DNA from: Vitrella brassicaformis CCMP3155
Lineage: Eukaryota > Protista > Chromerida
Direction: 5' to 3'
NCBI GenBank assembly: GCA_001179505.1
Contig: CDMY01000621.1
Coordinates: forward strand, 1 to 41,190
Length of the DNA stretch: 41,190 nucleotides
Part shown: piece by piece, positions 1,305 to 10,400 of the stretch
Layout of the letters: each line of letters opens with the position of its first letter
How positions within the stretch are numbered: the stretch's first letter is position 1
Position numbers and translations under genes: made by a program
The notes under the pieces: generated by a model
Told to the model about the DNA's origin: nothing
Databases searched by the model: none
The model's input: only the letters and a program-made list of their open reading frames with translations

Positions 1305-2840
1305 GGGCGGAGGGACGGAAGCGTGTCATTGTGGTATGGCGTGTGGAATCCACAGGATGAAGTGGAAGGCTGATTTGATAGAGAAGCGGCGCAGTCGCCT
1401 CTCTATGCCCATGACCGTCGTCACAGGCAGCCCATTCCCATGGTGCTCACACACACACACACACATACACACACACAAACGGCAGACACACAGACCCACG
1501 GGAATCCTCCGTGTGTGTTGCAATGCAGGACGGATGATCTCGAGAGCTGGGCTTATCGCCTTGTGGAGCTGAGGTACGAGAGCACATATTAAACACCTCC
1601 CTCTCACGGCTGTGTGCGAGTGTGTGTGCCTGTAGGGGTGTTTACGACCTGAGGAGGGAGATGAAAGTGGGGCCCAGGCCGGGACTCAGCAGAGACAAAG
1701 TCAGACAGACAATCAGACACACACCGTACCACTGTCACACTCACCCCCCTGTCCTGTGCGGACGTGTTTGTTATGGTTGTCAGCCTGGCTACAACATTGT
1801 GTGCCCCCTCGTACTCGAGGACGGGTAAATAGACAGACAAACAGTCAAACAAACAAACAAACCACAAGGGTACCATGTGTCCGCGTGTGCATGCGTGTGT
1901 ATGGTCAGGACTCGTGTGTTGATCAACCGAGGTCACATCAACTTCGAGTACGCTGAAGCCGATGTCCGCAGAGAGGTCAGCTGCACTCAGCACCCACGCA
2001 GCCTTCACACAGACAGACGCACCGCAAATGTGTGTGCGCTCTCCCACCATGGCTGGCTAACAGATCCCCGAGTGGCTCAGCGTCCGAGCCGTCATCGATC
2101 CCGGCGAGATTGTAAACACACACACGAAGCAGACCATTCACTCATTCACCTCTCGCTCACCTCTCCCTCCCCTCCCTTGCTCTCCCTCAGCCCAACTTCC
2201 GTTGGTTGAATCCGCTGGGTCGTCTGAAGAACAGACCCGACGACAACATGTTCCACTCAATGAGGGCAGAGGACCTGGCACAGAGGTCGGGGGCGCCCAA
2301 CATCCAGGCCTGCTCACAGGCTGTCCTCAACGCTTTCGGTCAGTCAGGCACACAGCACACGCAGGGCGACGTGGGCGGGGAGGGAGGGAGGGGGGGCGGG
2401 GAGAGAGATTCGTGTCGTCTGTGTGTGTAAATGTGGTGCAGACGCCATTTACGATGAGGACAAGTACCTGCCGCCCAACAGTAAGCAGCACAGCAGAGAG
2501 AGAGAGAGAGAGGGAGGGATGTGTGTGTGTGAGTGGATATTGCGTGTCGCGTGTGTGCACACGTATGTCAGTGCGCCGTCGTCGGTTCACGAGTGAGTTC
2601 GACATGAAGGGCAAGAAGGACTACCTCCTCTTCTGGGCCGACGAATTCACACACTTCAACTACGCCATGCAGTGGTACGTCTGTGTGTGAGTGGGCTGCC
2701 GACCTACCTACCTACCTAGTGCGGCCATTGAAGCGCACACACGCCATCGCCTACGTGTCTGTGTCAGGTTCGGCATGGCGGCCTTGGCTGCGGTGATGAC
2801 GGTGTCCAAGTTCATCCAAGTCAGCAGATGGAGGTTCTGA
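413..2840 (+). CDS. SURF1: SURF1/Shy1 cytochrome c oxidase assembly protein, about 13 exons
   Basis: Manual splicing is phase-consistent and gives ...GLWQLYR|MKWKADLIEKRRSRL...PGYNIVCPLVLEDG|TRVLINRGH...FTHFNYAMQW|FGMAALAAVMTVSKF. These are the SURF1 hallmarks (GxWQxxRxxWK after TM1, GY..PL..LVNRG, H..YA..WF before TM2). The Arg-rich N-terminus MLSASLRHVRRV resembles a mitochondrial presequence. Confidence 0.92.
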
Positions 2841-3525
2841 CCGGGCGGCCGTGTCGATGGATGCAGTCAGTTGTTGTTGTGCGTACGCCCCGTCCATTTG
2901 GAGTGTCGTGCTGTCTTGTCTGATCGCGGGATTGTTGCCATAACCGACGTCGGGGCTGATCGTCGTCGGTTGCAGCAGCGAGTCGGAGGGCGAACGTGAG
3001 ACAGCATGGTGCAGCAGAGAGGAGGGGCCTCCTCGGTGCGTTGTGTGTGTATGTGCGCGTGTGAGAGAGAAATTGGACCGGCTTGTTTTGGTTGAGTTGT
3101 CTGCTGATCGATAGAGAGAGTGCGTTTCCCGCCTTGTTTGTACATGCATGTCCTCCCGGGTTTGGGCTGCACATGGACCTGGCTGTTGGTATCAGCAATG
3201 GCCGGGCTCATGCGCTCGCATTCGGTACGGCGCGCGCAGACAGGGGGAAAAGGACGGCTCGATGGATGGATGGATGGACCTGTTGAGGTGAATTACACAC
3301 ACGCGAGAGACGTGTCTGTCTGTCTGGGTGGGTCGCTGGGTGGGTGGCTGTACACTCAGTCAGCAGTGTCAATCAACGCATATATACACACAGGAAGAGC
3401 AGAGGAGGAAATGCGATCAATCATCACCATCAATCAGACTTTCGCACATTGACTGACACAGTGGCTGAAAAAGCACTGATATAGATAGATAGACCTGAGC
3501 TGGCGTGTGAACCCCCCCCCCCCCC

Positions 3526-3825
3526 NNNNNNNNNNNNNNNNNNNNNNNNNNNNNNNNNNNNNNNNNNNNNNNNNNNNNNNNNNNNNNNNNNNNNNNNNNN
3601 NNNNNNNNNNNNNNNNNNNNNNNNNNNNNNNNNNNNNNNNNNNNNNNNNNNNNNNNNNNNNNNNNNNNNNNNNNNNNNNNNNNNNNNNNNNNNNNNNNNN
3701 NNNNNNNNNNNNNNNNNNNNNNNNNNNNNNNNNNNNNNNNNNNNNNNNNNNNNNNNNNNNNNNNNNNNNNNNNNNNNNNNNNNNNNNNNNNNNNNNNNNN
3801 NNNNNNNNNNNNNNNNNNNNNNNNN
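3526..3825. other. Assembly gap (300 N) flanked on both sides by poly-C
   Basis: Run of N directly visible; C-runs at 3512-3525 and 3826-3839. Confidence 0.99.
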
Positions 3826-4340
3826 CCCCCCCCCCCCCCAGGGTACGGGCACGGTGGATGGATGCATGCCCAAAAAAGTGACCGACACACCCAGACACAC
3901 CACACACACACACATATAAGATAGGATGAATGACATGCTCGCTTGCCACACGTGTGAACGCGTAGATGTCCTGTACGTGTTGTATGCATGCATCATGCAC
4001 CAAGTCGATTAAGTGGGCGGCTGTCTTCTTCGCTGAATTAGCACGAGCTGGGCCCCTCTGTCTGTCGGTCTGTCTGTCTGTCTGGTGAGACATAAATAGC
4101 ACTCTCACACGCACGCCGTATGGATGGATGGATGGATGGATGGATGGATGGAGACAGGCAGACAGTGAGGTGGCGTAAGGAAGGGCGAGACACACAGAGA
4201 AAGTCAGGAGAAAAATCACTCACCGACCAGACCAATGGATGGAGGCATTGCATTGCATTGATGGACGGATGGACAAAACCAAACCAAAAAGGACTCACAG
4301 AAAAATCCAAACCAAATCACCTACCTCCCTCCCCACCCAC

Positions 4341-4367
4341 CTATAATGGGGGGTCGACCAAGGCCCC

Positions 4368-4429
<62 letters not shown>

Positions 4430-7400
4430 GTGCGCATTCCCGTGCACTCATACCCACCACAACCAAGCCGCCGCCTCATTTCATTTCTCCCCACCTCACC
4501 TGGCAGGTTGAATCCCTCCTTGAGGCCGCCATTGGTATCCAGCAGGCCGTAGAAGTCCTCAAACCCGCACTTTTCGTAGTCAAAGTCGCCACCCTCGCCC
4601 ACATGCTCGCAGTTGAAGAACCGCCACCGCCGCGGCGCGTCTGTCGACGCAAAGTGGAACACACACCGCTCACGCACCCCTCCCTGCTGCACCACCACAC
4701 CACTCCCAGCAGCCATCTGGACCTGCTCCTTCTTATCTGGGGGCTGCTGTGGATCGGCTGCCGACGGTGGCGCGACGACGATAGGCCGCCTGACGACAAA
4801 CTGCGGGCTGATGGAGGACTTCTCCGCCGTTGGTGGTGGGCCTTCGAGCTTGGGGAGGGCTGAGGGGTCGCCGACAAGGTTAGGCAGGTAGGGGCTGCAT
4901 GTCTCCCGGGTCTCCTGGTCTTGCCAGAGACACAGCTGCCACGCGGTGGGCGGGGGCGATGATCCTCCTGGGAAGCGGAAGACCTCCCACCTGAAGTACC
5001 ACCTGCCGTTCCAGTAGTCGTGGGGAGACGTCCAGTCGGCTGGCCAGCCCGCACGCGCTGACGCCGGAGGGGCGTAGTCGTAATCGTAATCGTACTCGTC
5101 TTCTCCTCCGTCTGGTGCTGCTTCGGTCGGCTGGCCTTCGAGCTTGTCGAACCAGAAGCCGCGCTCCGCATCGCCCGGTCCCCCCACCCTGCTCAGGGTC
5201 ACCACCCTGTCCACCACCAGAAACTCCGTCTCGCTCTGACCACCACCACTAGCACCACCACCACCTCCTCCTCCTCCTCCCTCGCCCGACATGTACGCCG
5301 CCCAGTCGTTTGAGAACTCTGCGCCCTCGGCCACAGCGATGATGGTGACGCGCATCTCAAGAGGCAGGTAGTCGACGGCCCTGTCCCAGCATGACTCTTT
5401 GTCGACTGAGAGGTCAGACACGATGCAGCCCCAGGGGGAGTCGTTGCCGTCGAGGGCCCGGAGGGGGCCGCCGATGAAGTCTAGGTCGGTTGGGCGGGCG
5501 AAGTCCACTGGCTTGTCGGCTGTGGCGTGCCACCAGTCGGTGGCGGGCGTAGACACGCTGTAGACGATGTGACTCCGGTTCGCTGCACACGCGTGTTGGG
5601 AGGCATTTGGTGTGTCTGTGTCTGTGTCTGTGTGTGCGAGGTTGTTACTTGTCTCTGAACGGAGTTCCAGCGGCAGGTCATCCACCGGCATCATCAGGGG
5701 ACGCTGTCTTTTCTCCTCATCTTCCTCCGGCTCAGGCTCTATCGGCTCCATAGGCTCCATCCCCGCTGCCTCTTCTGTGTCGACTGTCTCCACCTCGCCC
5801 CCGTCCCGTGTGACCGACAGCTGGTAGTCATAGTAGCTGTCATCACCACCAGGCCGCTTGTCGTTGGACGTCACATAGGGGCTGCACCCCTCCCGCCCCC
5901 CCGTCTGCCACACGCACACCTGCCACGCCGAGGGGGGCGGCCCGTCGCCATCCGGTCGGCCGAAGATCTCCCATCGCGTGTGCCAGCTGCCGTGGTAGTA
6001 GTCGAAAGGGTCCATCCAGCTGTCGGGGTAATCCGCCACTGCAGCGGCGCTCTGCTGGTCGAGGGCGTGCCACCAGAAGCCGTGGTGGCTGCCGGGGTCG
6101 CCGGCGCCCTTGGCCACGGTGACGATCTTGTCTAGGACGAGGAGCTCGCCGAAAGCCAGGGGCAGGTTTGGGTTGTTGAGGTAGTGGACCCAGTTGCCCG
6201 AGAAGTCGGTTCCGTCTGCCACGGCGACGATGGTGACGCGCATCTCGAGAGGCAGGTAGTCGTCAGCCCGCTCCCAGCAGGACTGGGAGGGCGATGTGAG
6301 GTCCGACACGATGCAGCCCTCCTCGGTGCCGTGTGCGCCGTCGAAGGCACGGACGGGGCCGCCGACGCGGGTCTTGCCGTCGACTTGGGAGAGGTCGATT
6401 TGGTTGGACGGATCCTTGTGCCACCAATCCGTGGCGGGGGAGGATGAGCCATAGATCACAATCCCGCTGCCGTCACGAGCTGCAGACAGAGAGACAAGAC
6501 ATGTATACATACATGGCCAGTTTCGATGAGTTGAGTGCGCACCATCTCTGTTAGAGATGGGGCTGAGTTGTGCCGCCTTGAGCTCGACGGCCTCCTCCGC
6601 CTTGTCTTCAACCACCGCCTGGCTGGTGGCGGTGAGCGAGTGCGAGTCGGAGTGCTCTTGAGCAGCAGCAATGGTGGCCTGTGTGCCGGTCGAGACATAG
6701 CTGTAGACGTACTGGAGGAAGTCGTTGGCGTTGCCGATGTCGGCCTGGTCGCCATTGCCGGTGGGCCACCCCGTCTGACCCACATACACAGCTATGTCAG
6801 GATAGCCTGCCCAGCCCAACACACCACACACAACACATCCAGTGATGCAATCTTAATGGTCCTCCTGTGGCAGGGCACCCATACTCACTCACCTAGCCGT
6901 GACAGCGCGGCCTTGAGTGTGTCGACAAGTGCCGCCATCAGCCCGGTGTACTGCGTGCCCGTCCCGTCGTCCGTGTAAGAGCCCTTCCCAAGCGCAAAGT
7001 TCAGGTCGACGTCGGCCTCCCCCTTGGTATACACGTCATACACGTTGACGTTGAACAGCATGGGGGCGCCCTGGCTCTTGAGCACGTCCAGGATGCTCTT
7101 CAGGGCCTCCTGAAACTCATCGACAAACTCGCCTGACGATGGGGGCAGCAACTGACGAAAAAGGAGCAACAAGCGCATTTCAGTGAGACGTGTTGTCGGC
7201 GTGTTCTGCTCTTCTGTGGCTACTTGTTTGAGGATGGTTGGCCCCTCTGCGACTGTGACCCAGAAGGACGCTTGTGCGCTGTCGACGGCCGCCTTGAGGG
7301 TGTTGAGAGATGCGAGCAGCAGCTCAGCCGGGGCTCCGCCCTGGTTCTCGTGCAGTGTGCCGCTGCCCACCACAATCGCCTCCACCTTGTCTTGGAAACC

Positions 7401-10400
7401 CTGTGTGTGTGTGGGAGGGAAAGAGTCCGCATACATATGTGTTGACAAAAGGATGGTCACGTCACCGACTTGACTTACCGTGAGGTGGTCGATCATCTCT
7501 TGTGCCTTTGCCTCGGTCATGCCGAGCTGGCCGTTGGAGATGCCGACATAGATGCGGCATGGGTCGCTGCCGAAGGCCGACGAGACGCTCTGGGCCTCGC
7601 TCTGCAGCGGGAACAGACTGTTCTCCCACGTCTTGATGTACTCCACTCCCGCACTCTGACATGACACACGCAAGACAACACACACACAGGGCACGCACGT
7701 CGAGGGAGGCACAATTATATGGACGCGCAGCCCCACCGCCACCCCCGCCCACCTTGAGTGCGTCGATTGATGATTGGATTGTGTCCTCCGAAGCCACCAG
7801 ATTGACACCCCAGCACCAGCCTTCACCAGGAGTCTCCGGAGGCGTCTCCGGAGGCGGCGGTGGACCATCTTCAGGAGGCGGTGGGCCCGGTGTGGTTGTG
7901 GTCGTCCCGTCAGGTGGAGGCGGTGGGTTCGGCGCTTCCGTCGAGCCATCTGGTGGGGCCGCAGATGGACTAGCTGTGGTGTCTGGCTGTGGAATGGGCG
8001 TCATCGGAGGGTCCGTCATCGGTGGCTCCATTGAGGGTGTCAGTGGCTGAGTGGTGGGCATCGATGTGGAGGGGTCTGACGGCTGGGTGGTCGGCACCAC
8101 TGACGGCATGTCGGTAGGGGTGGGCACCACCTCGGTCGGCGTGGGGGGTGAGGATGGCACAGATGAAGGATCGGACTGGGCCGTCTGGTACACTGCAGAG
8201 AGAGGAAGACAGGCAGACACAGCACAGCACAGCGACACACACCTGCCTGCGACTGCAGCATTCCCTCCCATTTCGTTTGTTCGCCTGCTTACGCATGAGA
8301 ATGGACGGCGAGCCATCGACGCCCAGAATGTTGAGCGGCATGGCGGTGACCTCCACATACTCCTCACCCTCGAACAGCTTCATAATCTCGTTTATCGGCT
8401 CATACACGACCCCCCCGTTGTCACCCGTCGCCGTGTATGGCTGGTCCTTGTCGACGCTCCGCACGGACCCGCTCTTAAAGGTCGCCATCATCCCCGTCGG
8501 CCCCCGGATCTCGAAGCCGCCCGCACTGACCTTGGCGTCGCACTCGACGGCCACGACGGCGAAGGTAGTGGTGCCGTCCCACTCCTCCTCCATGAGCTTG
8601 GTCAGGTCGACGGTGGCCGTGTCGGTTAGGTGGTCGGCCCGGAAGAACCAGGGGGTCGTGACGGGCTCCTTGTCCGCATTGAGAGGGATCAGCTCGAAGC
8701 CAATGAACTTGGGATCTGAATGAACACAGCACGAACGACACGGCCGTGCCAGACAGACCGACATGGACGGAATACATGTCATGTCGGCCAGACGACACGG
8801 CAGGTGGTGCTCAGGTTGGGAATGTCGCGTCGCACCTGAGCAGGGTCTCCCCTGGATGTAGATTGATATCTCGAGCTGAACGCCCGGCGTCTTGTCGGCG
8901 GACATCGGCGTCGCCCGCAGGATGTAGTGCCCGTCGGGCACCACTTCCTCCTCCGACTCGCCAGTGAGGGCATCCATCAGCGACTTGAGCAGCGTCCTCG
9001 TGTCGCCCTCCGACTCCTCAGTGCCGAATGCCGCCCACGCCCAGTCCTGTGGGGTGCCTTCATCTGGGGTGGGCGTGGTTGATGATGACGGTACGGGGAC
9101 CTCTGGATCGGGCGATGTCGGCATGGCTGGTGCGGTGGTCGGCATCGGTACAGTCGTCGGCATTGGCGTGGTCGACGACAAGAACCCATCTGGTACGGGT
9201 GTTGTGGTGGACGTGATGGGTATCTCAGGAGGGGTGGTGCTTGTGGCGGGCGACTGCTCTGGAGCAGGCTCTTCAGGGGCGGGATTGACAGGCACCAATG
9301 GATCCTGAGGCTTAACGACCACCCACGGCTCGTCAATCACGGTGTTCCCGGGCGGATTGCATCCGAAATTGTTCATCGCACAAGCCGGCCGCTGGCAGGA
9401 GAAACACACGGGGCTGCGAGTGGGCCGCCGGGGCCAGGCCTTCCGGCCGTGGTGGCCGATATGCAGCGGCTGCCGATACATCCTGCGGAATGTCAGGGAG
9501 TCGGCCGTCTCTTGCGTGTCGTTGAGACTGTCCACATCCAGCGCCGTCGCCAGGGATTTGGCCGCCTCAGGAGGCACAATCTTGTACGCCATTGCCGACG
9601 CGGGCGGCTCCTCAGCAAAAGTCATGTTCTTGGCCAGCTCGCTGAGCGACAGCCGTTGAGCGGAGGCGGCGAGTCTCCCATCGTCAAGAATCGCCTTGGC
9701 TTCATACTCAAAGATCGCCTCGCCGGTCTCATTTGCGTTTGCGGCCGGGTTGAAGAGCTGAAAGAAGACGGTATCGACGCCATGGTTGGACTTGCCGAGG
9801 ACCAAGAAGGTGAAGTGCTGCACCATGGTTGCATCGAGGAACATGGTGCGGTGGGTGGAGAGGTCGATGGGCCCGCTGCGGGACACCACACTCCCGTCTT
9901 CATCAAGCTCGACGAACTCCATCTCCATGACTGTTTCTGCCGGGTGCGCAGGGACCGCTGCAGCTGCATCTGTGCTTGCCTCTGACTGCACGTTTGTCTG
10001 GGCTTGACCGACTGTCGTCTTTGGTTCACCGGCTCCTCGACTCCGACGCTTGTAGTTGATGAAGCGCTCTGAATGATAGATAGAGGGAGCGCGGACGAGA
10101 GAAGCCATGATTGGGTGTGATTGGCTTGGCCTGGCCAAGCCTTGCTCGGTATCTCACAAACCCACTGACTCACCCCATTTTCGTTTGATCTCCTCGGTGG
10201 TTTCGGTGAGGATGCTGCTGCTGAGGGGGCTCCTGCTCTGAAGGCCTCGCAGCACTGACGATGACAACGACTTGCCTGATCAACGGCCGGCCGGCCACAC
10301 ACATTGAATCTTGAATCAACAAACCTCACAGCCAGGCGGTGTGTCTGCCCGGTCGGTCGGTCTCACCATGTGGGTCAAGCAGGCTCATAAATGGCAGGTA

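What the first reader, a model, noticed from the sequence alone, without database searches (positions are those of the whole stretch)
4503..7818. GH17 barrel apparently split by a ~625-aa insertion between helix 7 and strand 8
Seen: GH17 motifs run in order from WGVN (about 7818) to VYVGQTGWPTGNG..GNANDFLQYVYSYVSTGT (about 6683) and then stop. The missing end of the fold reappears about 625 aa later at 4503-4670 as CVFHFASTDAPRRW...FEDFYGLLDTNGGLKEGFNL. That resembles the GH17 terminal motifs (fungal type VFYFEAFDEPWK...EKHWG+F..DG.LK; plant type YIFA+FNEN.K...ERHFGLF.PD..PKY). The intervening region holds the two Trp-rich repeats. Inference: two whole domains are inserted in one loop of a (beta/alpha)8 barrel. 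I do not recall this architecture for GH17; it would put accessory modules beside the glucan groove.
Basis: partly seen in the sequence, partly recalled or inferred. Interest (0 to 1): 0.8.

Follow-up and report, generated by a model that had tools for sequence, protein, structure and literature searches.

The report
Dead glucanase barrel split by insert
One spliced gene of the alga Vitrella brassicaformis encodes a catalytically dead beta-1,3-glucanase-like barrel that stops one strand short, is followed by about 627 residues holding two copies of an unnamed beta-sandwich module, and ends in a short tail that probably, but not provably here, supplies the missing last strand.

Summary
The gene is on the minus strand and is the annotated Vitrella brassicaformis protein CEM26599.1 (P0109, 1707 aa). 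The GH17 match runs from about residue 746 to 1013 and ends at Pfam profile position 264 of 306. That is after helix 7 and before strand 8.

One spliced RNA contig covers the barrel, both Trp-rich repeats and the C-terminal piece in one open frame. "Two genes" is therefore refuted.

The 68-residue C-terminal piece holds the best match in the whole protein to the GH17 terminal motif (FEDFYGLLDTNGGLK against sERNfGLFyPDG..vY). Its chance probability is about 0.003-0.007. It keeps the invariant Glu and Gly of that motif and shows only synonymous differences from a 97% identical metagenomic relative.

The strand-8 stretch (CVFHFA) has no statistical support of its own. The one AlphaFold run possible without biasing the answer left the piece unplaced (pLDDT 25-40). 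The split barrel is likely, about 0.65, but not shown.

Both catalytic glutamates are replaced (G841, Q983). The inserted module folds confidently as a beta-sandwich with no Pfam family and no solved relative, and its two halves are in the opposite order to bacterial homologues.

The scan has noted a second GH17 pseudo-enzyme elsewhere in this genome. It has not noted this split layout before.

The parts
7753..7820 (-). GH17 strand 1 and helix 1 (GWCWGVNLVASEDTIQSSIDALK, P0109 746-768). This is the end of exon 7753-8192, whose upstream part is a Pro/Thr-rich linker.
   Evidence: The exon is defined by spliced RNA contigs. It is strand E10-14 of the AF2 model. The sequence was read.
7479..7655 (-). 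GH17 exon covering strands 2-3 (P0109 769-827).
   Evidence: Joints 7655/7753 and 7399/7478 appear in runs X4 and X5. The local GH17 HMM alignment begins at residue 788.
7224..7400 (-). GH17 exon with strand 4. The family's VGNE motif reads VGSG here, and the acid/base Glu is replaced by G841 (codon 7359-7361).
   Evidence: The HMM alignment pairs 'iavgnEvl' with 'IVVGSGTL'. Columns N101 and E102 of alignment A1 are at least 90% conserved in 60 GH17 rows.
6893..7151 (-). GH17 exon covering strands 5-6 (LLPPSSGEF...NVNVYDVY...LSRL).
   Evidence: Pfam GH17 matches profile 140-218 at E 7e-8. Solved plant glucanases match at E 5e-8.
6685..6806 (-). GH17 strand 7 and helix 7 (YPDIAVYVGQTGWPTGNG...YVSTG). 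The nucleophile Glu is replaced by Q983 (codon CAG, 6775-6777). The GH17 match ends at G1013.
   Evidence: Pfam matches profile 222-264. The HMM match ends at position 273 of 323. No differing letters appear in four runs (table 3).
6543..6684 (-). Ala/Glu-rich linker (P0109 1014-1060), where the insert begins.
   Evidence: AF2 predicts helices at low pLDDT. No family match was found.
5866..6462 (-). Trp-rich module, copy 1 (P0109 1067-1265). It lies in exon 5649-6479 (831 nt, phase 1-1).
   Evidence: AF2 gives pLDDT 87.7 and pTM 0.86 for one compact beta domain. The exhaustive search found 108 homologues.
5649..5865 (-). Acidic low-complexity linker between the two module copies.
   Evidence: Sequence read. 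AF2 pLDDT is below 50.
4876..5571 (-). Trp-rich module, copy 2 (P0109 1342-1573). It carries Gly-rich and acidic loops.
   Evidence: It is 43% identical to copy 1 in alignment A3. Homologues match both copies.
4678..4875 (-). Pro-rich linker (P0109 1574-1639).
   Evidence: Sequence read. It lies inside 4501-4910, where all 15 codon differences from relative L001 are synonymous.
4648..4665 (-). Candidate strand 8, CVFHFA (P0109 1644-1649).
   Evidence: Support comes only from position and order. The plant GH17 PSSM gives -12 bits. Bacterial GH17 read PCFIFEMFDE at this place. This assignment is inference.
4570..4614 (-). Extra loop bracketed by C1661 and C1675 (NCEHVGEGGDFDYEKCG). It accounts for the longer spacing between candidate strand 8 and the terminal motif.
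   Evidence: Sequence read. The spacing was compared with the GH17 consensus. A disulphide between the two Cys is inference.
4501..4563 (-). GH17 terminal motif, FEDFYGLLDTNGGLKEGFNLP (P0109 1678-1698).
   Evidence: This is the best site in the whole protein for the GH17 end block. It scores +3.6 bits and the next best site scores -9.6. One of 107,471 background positions reaches that score. hmmsearch gives i-E 0.003. hhalign aligns the same columns.
4370..4499 (-). Last intron (GT..AG), holding (GA)n and (CA)n microsatellites.
   Evidence: RNA contigs stop at 4500 and run on into sequence beyond it. The annotated protein joins 4500 to 4369.
4341..4369 (-). Last coding exon, D-GALVDPPL-stop. 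The GH17-like piece therefore sits at the true C-terminus.
   Evidence: P0109 ends ...GFNLPDGALVDPPL. The sequence was read.

Best explanation
This is one gene for a secreted, multi-domain surface or wall protein of Vitrella brassicaformis.

Its GH17-type (beta/alpha)8 barrel has lost both catalytic glutamates: the acid/base is now G841 and the nucleophile is now Q983. It most likely works as a non-hydrolysing beta-1,3-glucan-binding module.

The chain leaves the barrel in the loop after helix 7. It then runs through a helical linker, two copies of an about 200-residue beta-sandwich module (a candidate glycan-binding or adhesion module) and a Pro-rich linker. It returns for its last 68 residues, which supply strand 8 (CVFHFA), a Cys-bracketed extra loop and the GH17 closing motif (FEDFYGLL.TNG).

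The insert probably arose by insertion of a phase 1-1 module exon into an intron in the alpha7/beta8 loop, followed by tandem duplication.

Shown here: one mRNA; where the GH17 match ends; loss of both catalytic Glu; an independently folding inserted module; the GH17 terminal motif at the C-terminus; purifying selection on that piece.

Inferred: that the C-terminal piece physically closes the barrel; glucan binding; the disulphide; the origin by exon insertion.
For: One mRNA:
- An RNA contig of run X4 (5279 nt) covers exons 7753-8192, 7479-7655, 7224-7400, 6893-7151, 6543-6806, 5649-6479 and 4500-5582 with every GT..AG intron removed. Run X5, from another study, shows the same joints.
- The stored annotated protein P0109 (CEM26599.1) has exactly this structure.

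GH17 match and fold:
- The GH17 match ends at Pfam profile 264/306 and local HMM 273/323.
- The AF2 barrel has seven confident strands and no eighth.
- It superposes on solved plant GH17 at Z 28-31 and rmsd 2.2-2.9, with Foldseek E 2e-20.

Catalytic residues:
- Both are replaced, and four runs show no read-level variants.

C-terminal piece:
- The HMM forward score was reached by 7/2000 and 14/2000 shuffles.
- The two-block PSSM was reached by 1/5000 shuffles and 1/2585 natural windows.
- The motif block was reached at 1/107,471 background positions.
- The invariant E and G of the GH17 end (E289 and G293 in alignment A2) are kept as E1679 and G1683.
- Against relative L001, 4501-4910 shows 15 synonymous and 0 non-synonymous codon differences. 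Upstream, in repeat 2, the counts are 1 and 9.

Inserted module:
- AF2 gives pLDDT 87.7 and pTM 0.86.
- Its homologues sit in secreted bacterial proteins with CBM6, CBM4_9, GH43_C2 and type IX secretion tails, and in Vitrella and Piridium GH3 enzymes.
- Exon 6 is 831 nt, phase 1-1.
Against: - The strand-8 stretch itself scores -12 bits against the plant profile.
- hhalign gives only P 0.061 and covers 16 columns.
- Pfam and PDB sequence searches of the piece alone find nothing.
- The language-model search of the piece finds nothing usable.
- The AF2 run that had no alignment for the piece left it at pLDDT 25-40.
- In that model, residues 330-341 (GIVIYGSS, the first strand of Trp copy 1) overlay strand 8 of solved GH17 chains.
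- No other protein with this layout was found among 1.84 billion representatives, so conservation of the layout could not be tested.
- Glucan binding was not tested.
Confidence: 0.65

Rival explanations
1. The barrel is truncated. The GH17 domain simply ends after helix 7 as a decayed remnant in a pseudo-enzyme. The C-terminal 68 residues are an unrelated Cys-containing tail, and the resemblance to the GH17 end is chance.
For: - The piece has no Pfam, PDB or language-model hit on its own.
- hhalign gives P 0.061.
- The strand-8 block is not supported.
- AF2 did not place the piece.
- Catalytic decay shows the domain is already under relaxed enzymatic constraint.
Against: - The terminal motif is the top site in 1707 residues by a 13-bit margin, and natural sequence almost never matches it.
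- The match keeps the invariant Glu and Gly.
- It sits at the true C-terminus, exactly where a GH17 domain ends.
- The barrel part is otherwise well preserved: pLDDT about 90 and Z about 30 to solved GH17.
- A seven-strand open barrel would not be expected to be stable. This rests on general knowledge of TIM barrels.
- The tail shows only synonymous change.
Confidence: 0.22
2. The barrel is closed by another stretch. Strand 8 comes from a segment just after the linker, for example GIVIYGSS at 1066-1073, and the C-terminal piece does something else.
For: In the AF2 model of residues 740-1707, VIA-align extends the match to solved GH17 through model residues 330-341, overlaying chain residues about 282-293, which is strand 8. 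RDGSGIVIYG loosely resembles RPG..IETYIF.
Against: - That stretch has pLDDT 31-45 in the model.
- Folded with its own alignment, it is strand 1 of the Trp module at pLDDT about 97.
- It is conserved as part of that module in repeat 2 and in bacterial homologues that have no GH17.
- It is not among the top six strand-8 PSSM sites.
Confidence: 0.08
3. The layout is an artefact: two neighbouring genes, or a mis-assembly, joined by annotation.
For: The window has assembly gaps, and most public contigs are short. No second species shows the layout.
Against: - One spliced RNA contig spans all parts, and a second study shows the same joints.
- A collinear 7.6-kb DNA contig covers 4436-8400 (run X1).
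- The frame stays open across all joints.
Confidence: 0.02

Closest known systems
Plant-type GH17 endo-1,3-beta-glucanases (for example barley GII 1GHS, banana 2CYG, Cryptomeria CJP38 6JMS)
   Same: - The fold matches from strand 1 to helix 7: Z 28-31, rmsd 2.2-2.9, 266-274 residues aligned.
- Pfam PF00332 matches at E 2e-19.
- The GWP, NVY-type and PPS.G.F motifs are present.
- A terminal E..[FWY]GL[FL]..[DN]G motif sits at the C-terminus.
   Different: - Both catalytic Glu are replaced (G841, Q983).
- 626 residues are inserted between helix 7 and the presumed strand 8.
- The strand-8 sequence is strongly diverged, and the FNE Glu is absent.
- There is an extra Cys-bracketed loop.
- The domain lies at the end of a 1707-residue protein rather than being a free enzyme of about 310 residues.
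Glycosidases with a whole domain nested in the catalytic fold. Recalled from knowledge, not tested here: PA14 inserted in the GH3 beta-glucosidase KmBglI; the chitinase insertion domain between strand 7 and helix 7 of GH18; domain B between strand 3 and helix 3 of GH13.
   Same: An accessory beta-rich domain leaves and re-enters the catalytic fold through one loop, near the C-terminal, substrate-facing ends of the barrel strands.
   Different: - The family is different (GH17).
- The loop is different (alpha7/beta8, which lies on the side of the barrel opposite the catalytic face; see below).
- There are two tandem modules with long linkers rather than one tight subdomain.
- The host domain is a pseudo-enzyme.
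Unnamed Trp-rich beta-sandwich module of secreted bacterial proteins (for example NJK94680.1 of a Bacteroidales MAG, P0006) and of the Vitrella/Piridium GH3 and fasciclin proteins (CEM20314.1 is P0003; P0002; P0111)
   Same: - Sequence homology is E 1e-17 to 1e-4 across 107 representatives.
- Motifs are shared: SP..WW, CI.SD..CW.R.DY.P.R.T..AV, GF.W, P..W..P.DY..G.W..R.E and C.WQ...E.CSP.
   Different: - In 90 of 96 representatives where both halves were found, the halves are in the order B-A.
- The order is A-B in P0109 (twice), Vitrella P0003 and Piridium P0002 and P0065. Three further, unnamed representatives also read A-B but hold several copies.
- This amounts to a circular permutation.
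- Only here is the module nested in another domain.

Membership tests
GH17 (Pfam PF00332, clan GH-A) | Significant match to the family profile | tested here: met
   P0109 scores 70.7 bits (cut-off 28.2, E 2e-19) over profile 90-264. The local HMM gives 104.5 bits.
GH17 (Pfam PF00332, clan GH-A) | (beta/alpha)8 barrel superposable on solved GH17 structures | tested here: inconclusive
   Seven strands and helices are modelled at pLDDT about 90 and superpose at Z 28-31. The eighth strand and the closing segment are not placed with any confidence.
GH17 (Pfam PF00332, clan GH-A) | Acid/base Glu at the end of strand 4 (the NE of VGNE) | tested here: not met
   The motif reads VGSG. G841 aligns with the Glu, which is at least 90% conserved in 60 GH17 rows.
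GH17 (Pfam PF00332, clan GH-A) | Nucleophile Glu at the end of strand 7 (ETGWP) | tested here: not met
   The motif reads GQTGWP (Q983, codon CAG at 6775-6777). Four DNA/RNA runs show no variant.
GH17 (Pfam PF00332, clan GH-A) | C-terminal strand 8 (Y.FA.FNE) and the closing motif E..[FWY]G[LI][FL] | tested here: inconclusive
   The closing motif is present at 1678-1698 with p about 0.003-0.007 and the invariant E and G. Strand 8 is not recognisable by profile.
GH17 (Pfam PF00332, clan GH-A) | Hydrolysis or transglycosylation of beta-1,3-glucan | not testable with these tools
   This needs an enzyme assay. Loss of both catalytic Glu predicts no activity.
Carbohydrate-binding module (for the inserted Trp-rich module) | Beta-sandwich fold related to a known CBM family | tested here: inconclusive
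   The model is confident, but the best solved match is only Z 5.1. CBM32, CBM27 and other beta-sandwiches are tied at Z 3.8-4.6. Foldseek finds no match at E <= 1e-3. Atlas TM is <= 0.41. Pfam and NCBIfam find nothing.
Carbohydrate-binding module (for the inserted Trp-rich module) | Demonstrated glycan binding | not testable with these tools
   There is only co-occurrence with GH3, CBM6, CBM4_9, GH43_C2 and 3-keto-disaccharide hydrolase domains.

The most novel reading that the evidence does not exclude
This would be the first GH17 barrel with whole domains nested in it. Two copies of a circularly permuted, so far unnamed beta-sandwich module are threaded through the alpha7/beta8 loop of a naturally inactivated (E-to-Q, E-to-G) glucanase. 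The chain returns after 626 residues to close the barrel. The result would be a composite glucan-binding lectin scaffold specific to the Vitrella lineage.
Probability: 0.6. Interest if true: 0.55.

Novelty: new variant of a known kind. Interest (0 to 1): 0.45.

Why it matters
If the tail really closes the barrel, three things follow.
- GH17 would tolerate a 626-residue interruption one strand before its end. That is useful for protein engineering of TIM barrels: split or insertion sites and domain grafting.
- It would be a clean natural example of exon-mediated domain nesting.
- A glucanase would have been turned into a lectin-like scaffold in a photosynthetic relative of apicomplexan parasites, whose cyst and oocyst walls contain beta-1,3-glucan.

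Independently of the split, the inserted module is a widespread family without a name, and the eukaryotic and bacterial forms differ by circular permutation. There are 107 representative clusters, mostly from secreted bacterial proteins. The family deserves a family entry and a binding assay.

Tried and rejected
Database and pattern searches:
- The word-index protein search was run three times: on ORF 4324-6831, on P0109:740-1020, and on P0109 region 740-1707. It found no hits, so it said nothing about relatives.
- A metagenome scan with the barrel part found no relative.
- tblastn against plasmids found no GH17.
- A bacterial-genome scan with a GH17 alignment gave only 4 loci.
- A degenerate DNA pattern for NVYPYF...ETGWP fetched about 115 natural plant-type GH17 genes. 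These were used for all profiles.

Attempts to give AlphaFold an alignment for the C-terminal piece all failed:
- MAFFT scattered full-length GH17 rows over the insert.
- It misplaced separate C-terminal fragments onto strand 6.
- It treated them as insertions even with anchor rows.
- Mixed GH17 plus Trp-module alignments were also wrong.
- Only the run with GH17 rows cut before strand 8 was therefore made.

Other points:
- The protein-atlas search of the piece gave no usable hit.
- One search used a wrong reading frame (4501-4700) and is void. One search is the correct repeat.
- One search failed on a frame slip and was corrected.
- I did not build or hand in an insert-deleted or self-joined protein. 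Exons were searched one by one by reference until the stored annotated protein P0109 was found.
- Two-gene and mis-assembly readings were rejected.
- Reading GIVIYG as strand 8 was rejected.

Full report
WHAT IS THERE

The finding lies in an intron-bearing gene on the minus strand.
- Laying public runs on 4250-8400 showed that runs X4 and X5, from two studies, are spliced. Run X1 is collinear DNA.
- One 5279-nt X4 contig covers exons 7753-8192, 7479-7655, 7224-7400, 6893-7151, 6543-6806, 5649-6479 and 4500-5582. GT..AG introns are removed at 8193-8292, 7656-7752, 7401-7478, 7152-7223, 6807-6892, 6480-6542 and 5583-5648. The contig runs a further 2 kb upstream.
- No differing letters were reported in any of the four runs.
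- Exon-by-exon Pfam scans hit Glyco_hydro_17 only on exon 6894-7151 (profile 140-218, E 7e-8) and on exon 6544-6804 (profile 222-264).

A cluster look-up of a 97%-identical metagenomic fragment (P0001) returned the stored annotated protein of this very contig.
- It is P0109, which is CEM26599.1 and UniProt A0A0G4GBX2, 1707 aa, from Vitrella brassicaformis CCMP3155.
- Its exon joins are those of the RNA contigs.
- It ends ...GFNLP-DGALVDPPL. The last intron is therefore 4370-4499, and the GH17-like piece is at the true C-terminus.

THE OBSERVATION

On P0109, Pfam GH17 matches residues 837-1017 as one stretch, which is profile 90-264 of 306 (E 2e-19).
- To get GH17 sequences, I fetched about 115 natural plant-type GH17 genes from metagenomes with a degenerate DNA pattern.
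- An HMM of 27 non-redundant domains matches P0109 788-1013, which is positions 35-273 of 323, at 104.5 bits.
- Both matches stop at the G of the 'GTP' loop that precedes strand 8.
- The same alignment shows the acid/base Glu replaced by G841 (VGNE reads VGSG) and the nucleophile replaced by Q983 (ETGWP reads GQTGWP). Both columns are at least 90% conserved in 60 GH17 rows.
- Between G1013 and V1640 lie 626 residues, made up as follows:
  - an Ala/Glu-rich linker;
  - Trp-rich copy 1 (1067-1265);
  - an acidic linker;
  - copy 2 (1342-1573);
  - a Pro-rich linker.

IS THE C-TERMINAL PIECE THE END OF THE GH17 FOLD?

Sequence tests used a profile of the GH17 end, from GTP to the last residue. 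It was built without reference to this protein.
- hmmsearch finds its best site in all of P0109 at 1678-1689, pairing FEDFYGLLDTNG with sErnfGLFypdg.
- The forward score of residues 1640-1707 is 5.3 bits. That score was reached by 7 of 2000 composition-preserving shuffles, and it is the top 68-residue window of the protein.
- With two bacterial GH17 sequences added, 14 of 2000 shuffles reach the score, and HMMER's own i-E is 0.003.
- A two-block PSSM (strand 8 plus terminal motif, in order) was reached by 1 of 5000 shuffles and 1 of 2585 natural windows.
- The signal is nearly all in the terminal block. That block scores +3.6 bits at 1678, against -9.6 for the next site. It was reached at 1 of 107,471 natural background positions. 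This gives about 0.006 for the roughly 690 positions after helix 7.
- The two invariant residues of the GH17 end, E289 and G293 of alignment A2, are kept as E1679 and G1683.
- hhalign chooses the same 16 columns, but at P 0.061.
- The strand-8 block (RCVFHFASTDAP) scores -12 bits and so has no support of its own. Tenacibaculum GH17 read PCFIFEMFDE there, with the same Cys, but that is an anecdote.
- The longer spacing between CVFHFA and the motif is accounted for by a loop bracketed by C1661 and C1675.
- The piece alone has no Pfam, PDB-sequence or language-model hit.

A metagenomic relative (L001, about 89% DNA identity) gives a selection test.
- In 4501-4910, the linker plus the piece, there are 15 synonymous and 0 non-synonymous codon differences.
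- In the part of repeat 2 just upstream, there are 1 synonymous and 9 non-synonymous.

STRUCTURE

The first AlphaFold job used residues 740-1707, with 60 GH17 rows cut before strand 8. No alignment information could therefore favour the hypothesis.
- The barrel from strand 1 to helix 7 came out at pLDDT about 90, with seven strands.
- Everything after it, the tail included, came out at pLDDT 25-40.
- Foldseek and VIA-align confirm the GH17 fold: 6JMS at E 2e-20, and Z 30.7, rmsd 2.2, 274 residues aligned.
- VIA-align's ranges show that in this low-confidence region the model put GIVIYGSS (1066-1073) on strand 8.
- The second AlphaFold job used repeat 1 with 83 homologous rows. There, that same stretch is strand 1 of a compact beta-sandwich at pLDDT about 97 (mean 87.7, pTM 0.86). 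It is also conserved in homologues that have no GH17.
- I therefore read the placement in the first job as barrel-filling by the nearest beta-prone stretch.

Every attempt to get MAFFT to align GH17 ends onto the tail failed, so an alignment-supported run was not possible. The result is inconclusive, not negative.

THE INSERT

The exhaustive search, with strand 7 to the C-terminus as query, found 108 representatives.
- One is P0001, the fragment of a close relative of this same gene. All the others match only the Trp-rich module, and none has a GH17 part.
- The module has no Pfam or NCBIfam model.
- It has no solved relative: best Z is 5.1 with generic beta-sandwiches including CBM32 and CBM27, Foldseek finds nothing at E <= 1e-3, and Atlas TM is <= 0.41.
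- Its bacterial hosts are secreted proteins with CBM6, CBM4_9, GH43_C2, 3-keto-disaccharide hydrolase, Ig-like domains and type IX secretion tails.
- Its eukaryotic hosts are Vitrella and Piridium GH3 enzymes and a Piridium fasciclin protein.
- In 90 of 96 representatives where both halves were found, the two halves are in the order B-A.
- In P0109 (both copies), Vitrella P0003 and Piridium P0002 and P0065 the order is A-B. Three further, unnamed representatives also read A-B but hold several copies. This is a circular permutation.
- Copy 1 is a symmetric phase 1-1 exon of 831 nt, the class typical of shuffled extracellular modules.

HOW IT MOST LIKELY WORKS

The N-terminus has a hydrophobic leader, there are long Pro/Thr-rich linkers, and all recognisable parts are extracellular types. 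This points to a secreted wall or surface protein; that is inference.

The barrel cannot hydrolyse by the GH17 mechanism, because both Glu are gone. E-to-Q at the nucleophile is the classical binding-competent dead mutant (established knowledge). It most likely binds beta-1,3-glucan without cutting it.

The two beta-sandwich modules probably add glycan or surface binding.

I put the split-barrel reading at about 0.65. A barrel that otherwise models this well needs a strand 8. The only stretch with a GH17 end motif is exactly at the C-terminus, in the right order, constrained, and complementary to where the match stops.

An alpha-to-beta loop such as alpha7/beta8 lies at the N-terminal ends of the strands. 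That is the face opposite the catalytic groove. The long linkers could bring the modules anywhere, but 'beside the groove' does not follow from the insertion site.

COMPARISON AND NOVELTY

By profile and fold, the protein belongs to GH17. It fails both catalytic-residue criteria, so it is a GH17-fold pseudo-enzyme, not a glucanase as the UniProt name says.

Nested domains are known in other glycosidase families: GH3 PA14, the GH18 insertion domain and GH13 domain B. These are recalled from knowledge, not tested here. I found no report for GH17 in the paper library, and no second protein with this layout. If real, it is a new variant of a known kind.

The earlier scan notes on the pseudo-enzyme (s1-242779) and on the tandem Trp/Cys-rich domain (s1-242873) agree with what I tested. 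A second GH17 pseudo-enzyme elsewhere in this genome (s1-231149) was not examined.

LIMITS

- No orthologue is available.
- The exhaustive search was not run with the barrel part.
- Model coordinates are not readable here, so contacts could not be checked.
- All p-values rest on plant-type GH17 profiles.

Noticed in passing
4876-6462 (-); P0002, P0003, P0065 and bacterial hits P0004-P0108: The Trp-rich module is circularly permuted between lineages. Of 96 representatives where both halves were found, 90 (the bacterial type) have the halves in order B-A. Vitrella (this gene and the GH3 protein CEM20314.1) and Piridium sociabile have A-B. Three further, unnamed representatives also read A-B but hold several copies. 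The family has no Pfam or NCBIfam model and no solved relative (best Z 5.1), although it models at pLDDT 87.7.
   Followed up: partly
5649-6479 (-): The exon carrying Trp copy 1 is 831 nt and phase 1-1, that is symmetric. The next exon starts copy 2 in the same phase. This fits exon insertion followed by tandem duplication.
   Followed up: partly
6775-6777 and 7359-7361 (-): The nucleophile codon is CAG (Gln), one base from GAG (Glu). The acid/base position is GGC (Gly). Four DNA/RNA runs show no variant, so the inactivating changes are not sequencing errors. The UniProt name 'Glucan endo-1,3-beta-D-glucosidase' is probably wrong as to activity.
   Followed up: yes
L001 (ENA ERZ893784 contig k147_4732846) against window 2371-5614: A metagenome holds a close relative of Vitrella: about 89% DNA identity and 97% protein identity over the last coding exon. 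The first 317 nt of that contig match 5298-5614 in inverted orientation. This is probably an assembly chimera at the GGA/GGT repeat.
   Followed up: partly
3526-3825: The 300-N assembly gap sits beside a poly-C run. In the relative's contig L001 its two flanks are adjacent, with the matches overlapping by about 12 nt. The real gap is probably close to zero length.
   Followed up: partly
4370-4499 (-): The last intron consists largely of (GA)n and (CA)n microsatellites. The reads tool skipped 4363-4435 as repeat, so the last splice rests on the annotation and on contigs that run on beyond 4500, not on a listed joint.
   Followed up: partly
8293-10400 (-); P0109 residues 1-740: The N-terminal 740 residues have no match in Pfam or NCBIfam. 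They comprise a hydrophobic leader, two folded-looking regions at about 115-240 and 430-620, and Pro/Thr-rich mucin-like linkers. Residues 165-176 (HGVDTVFFQLFN) gave a chance-level hit to the GH17 strand-8 block.
   Followed up: no
P0109 1066-1073 (window about 6442-6465, -): Without an alignment for the insert, AlphaFold laid the first strand of Trp copy 1 into the empty strand-8 slot of the barrel at pLDDT 31-45. This is a caution for anyone reading a database model of this protein.
   Followed up: yes
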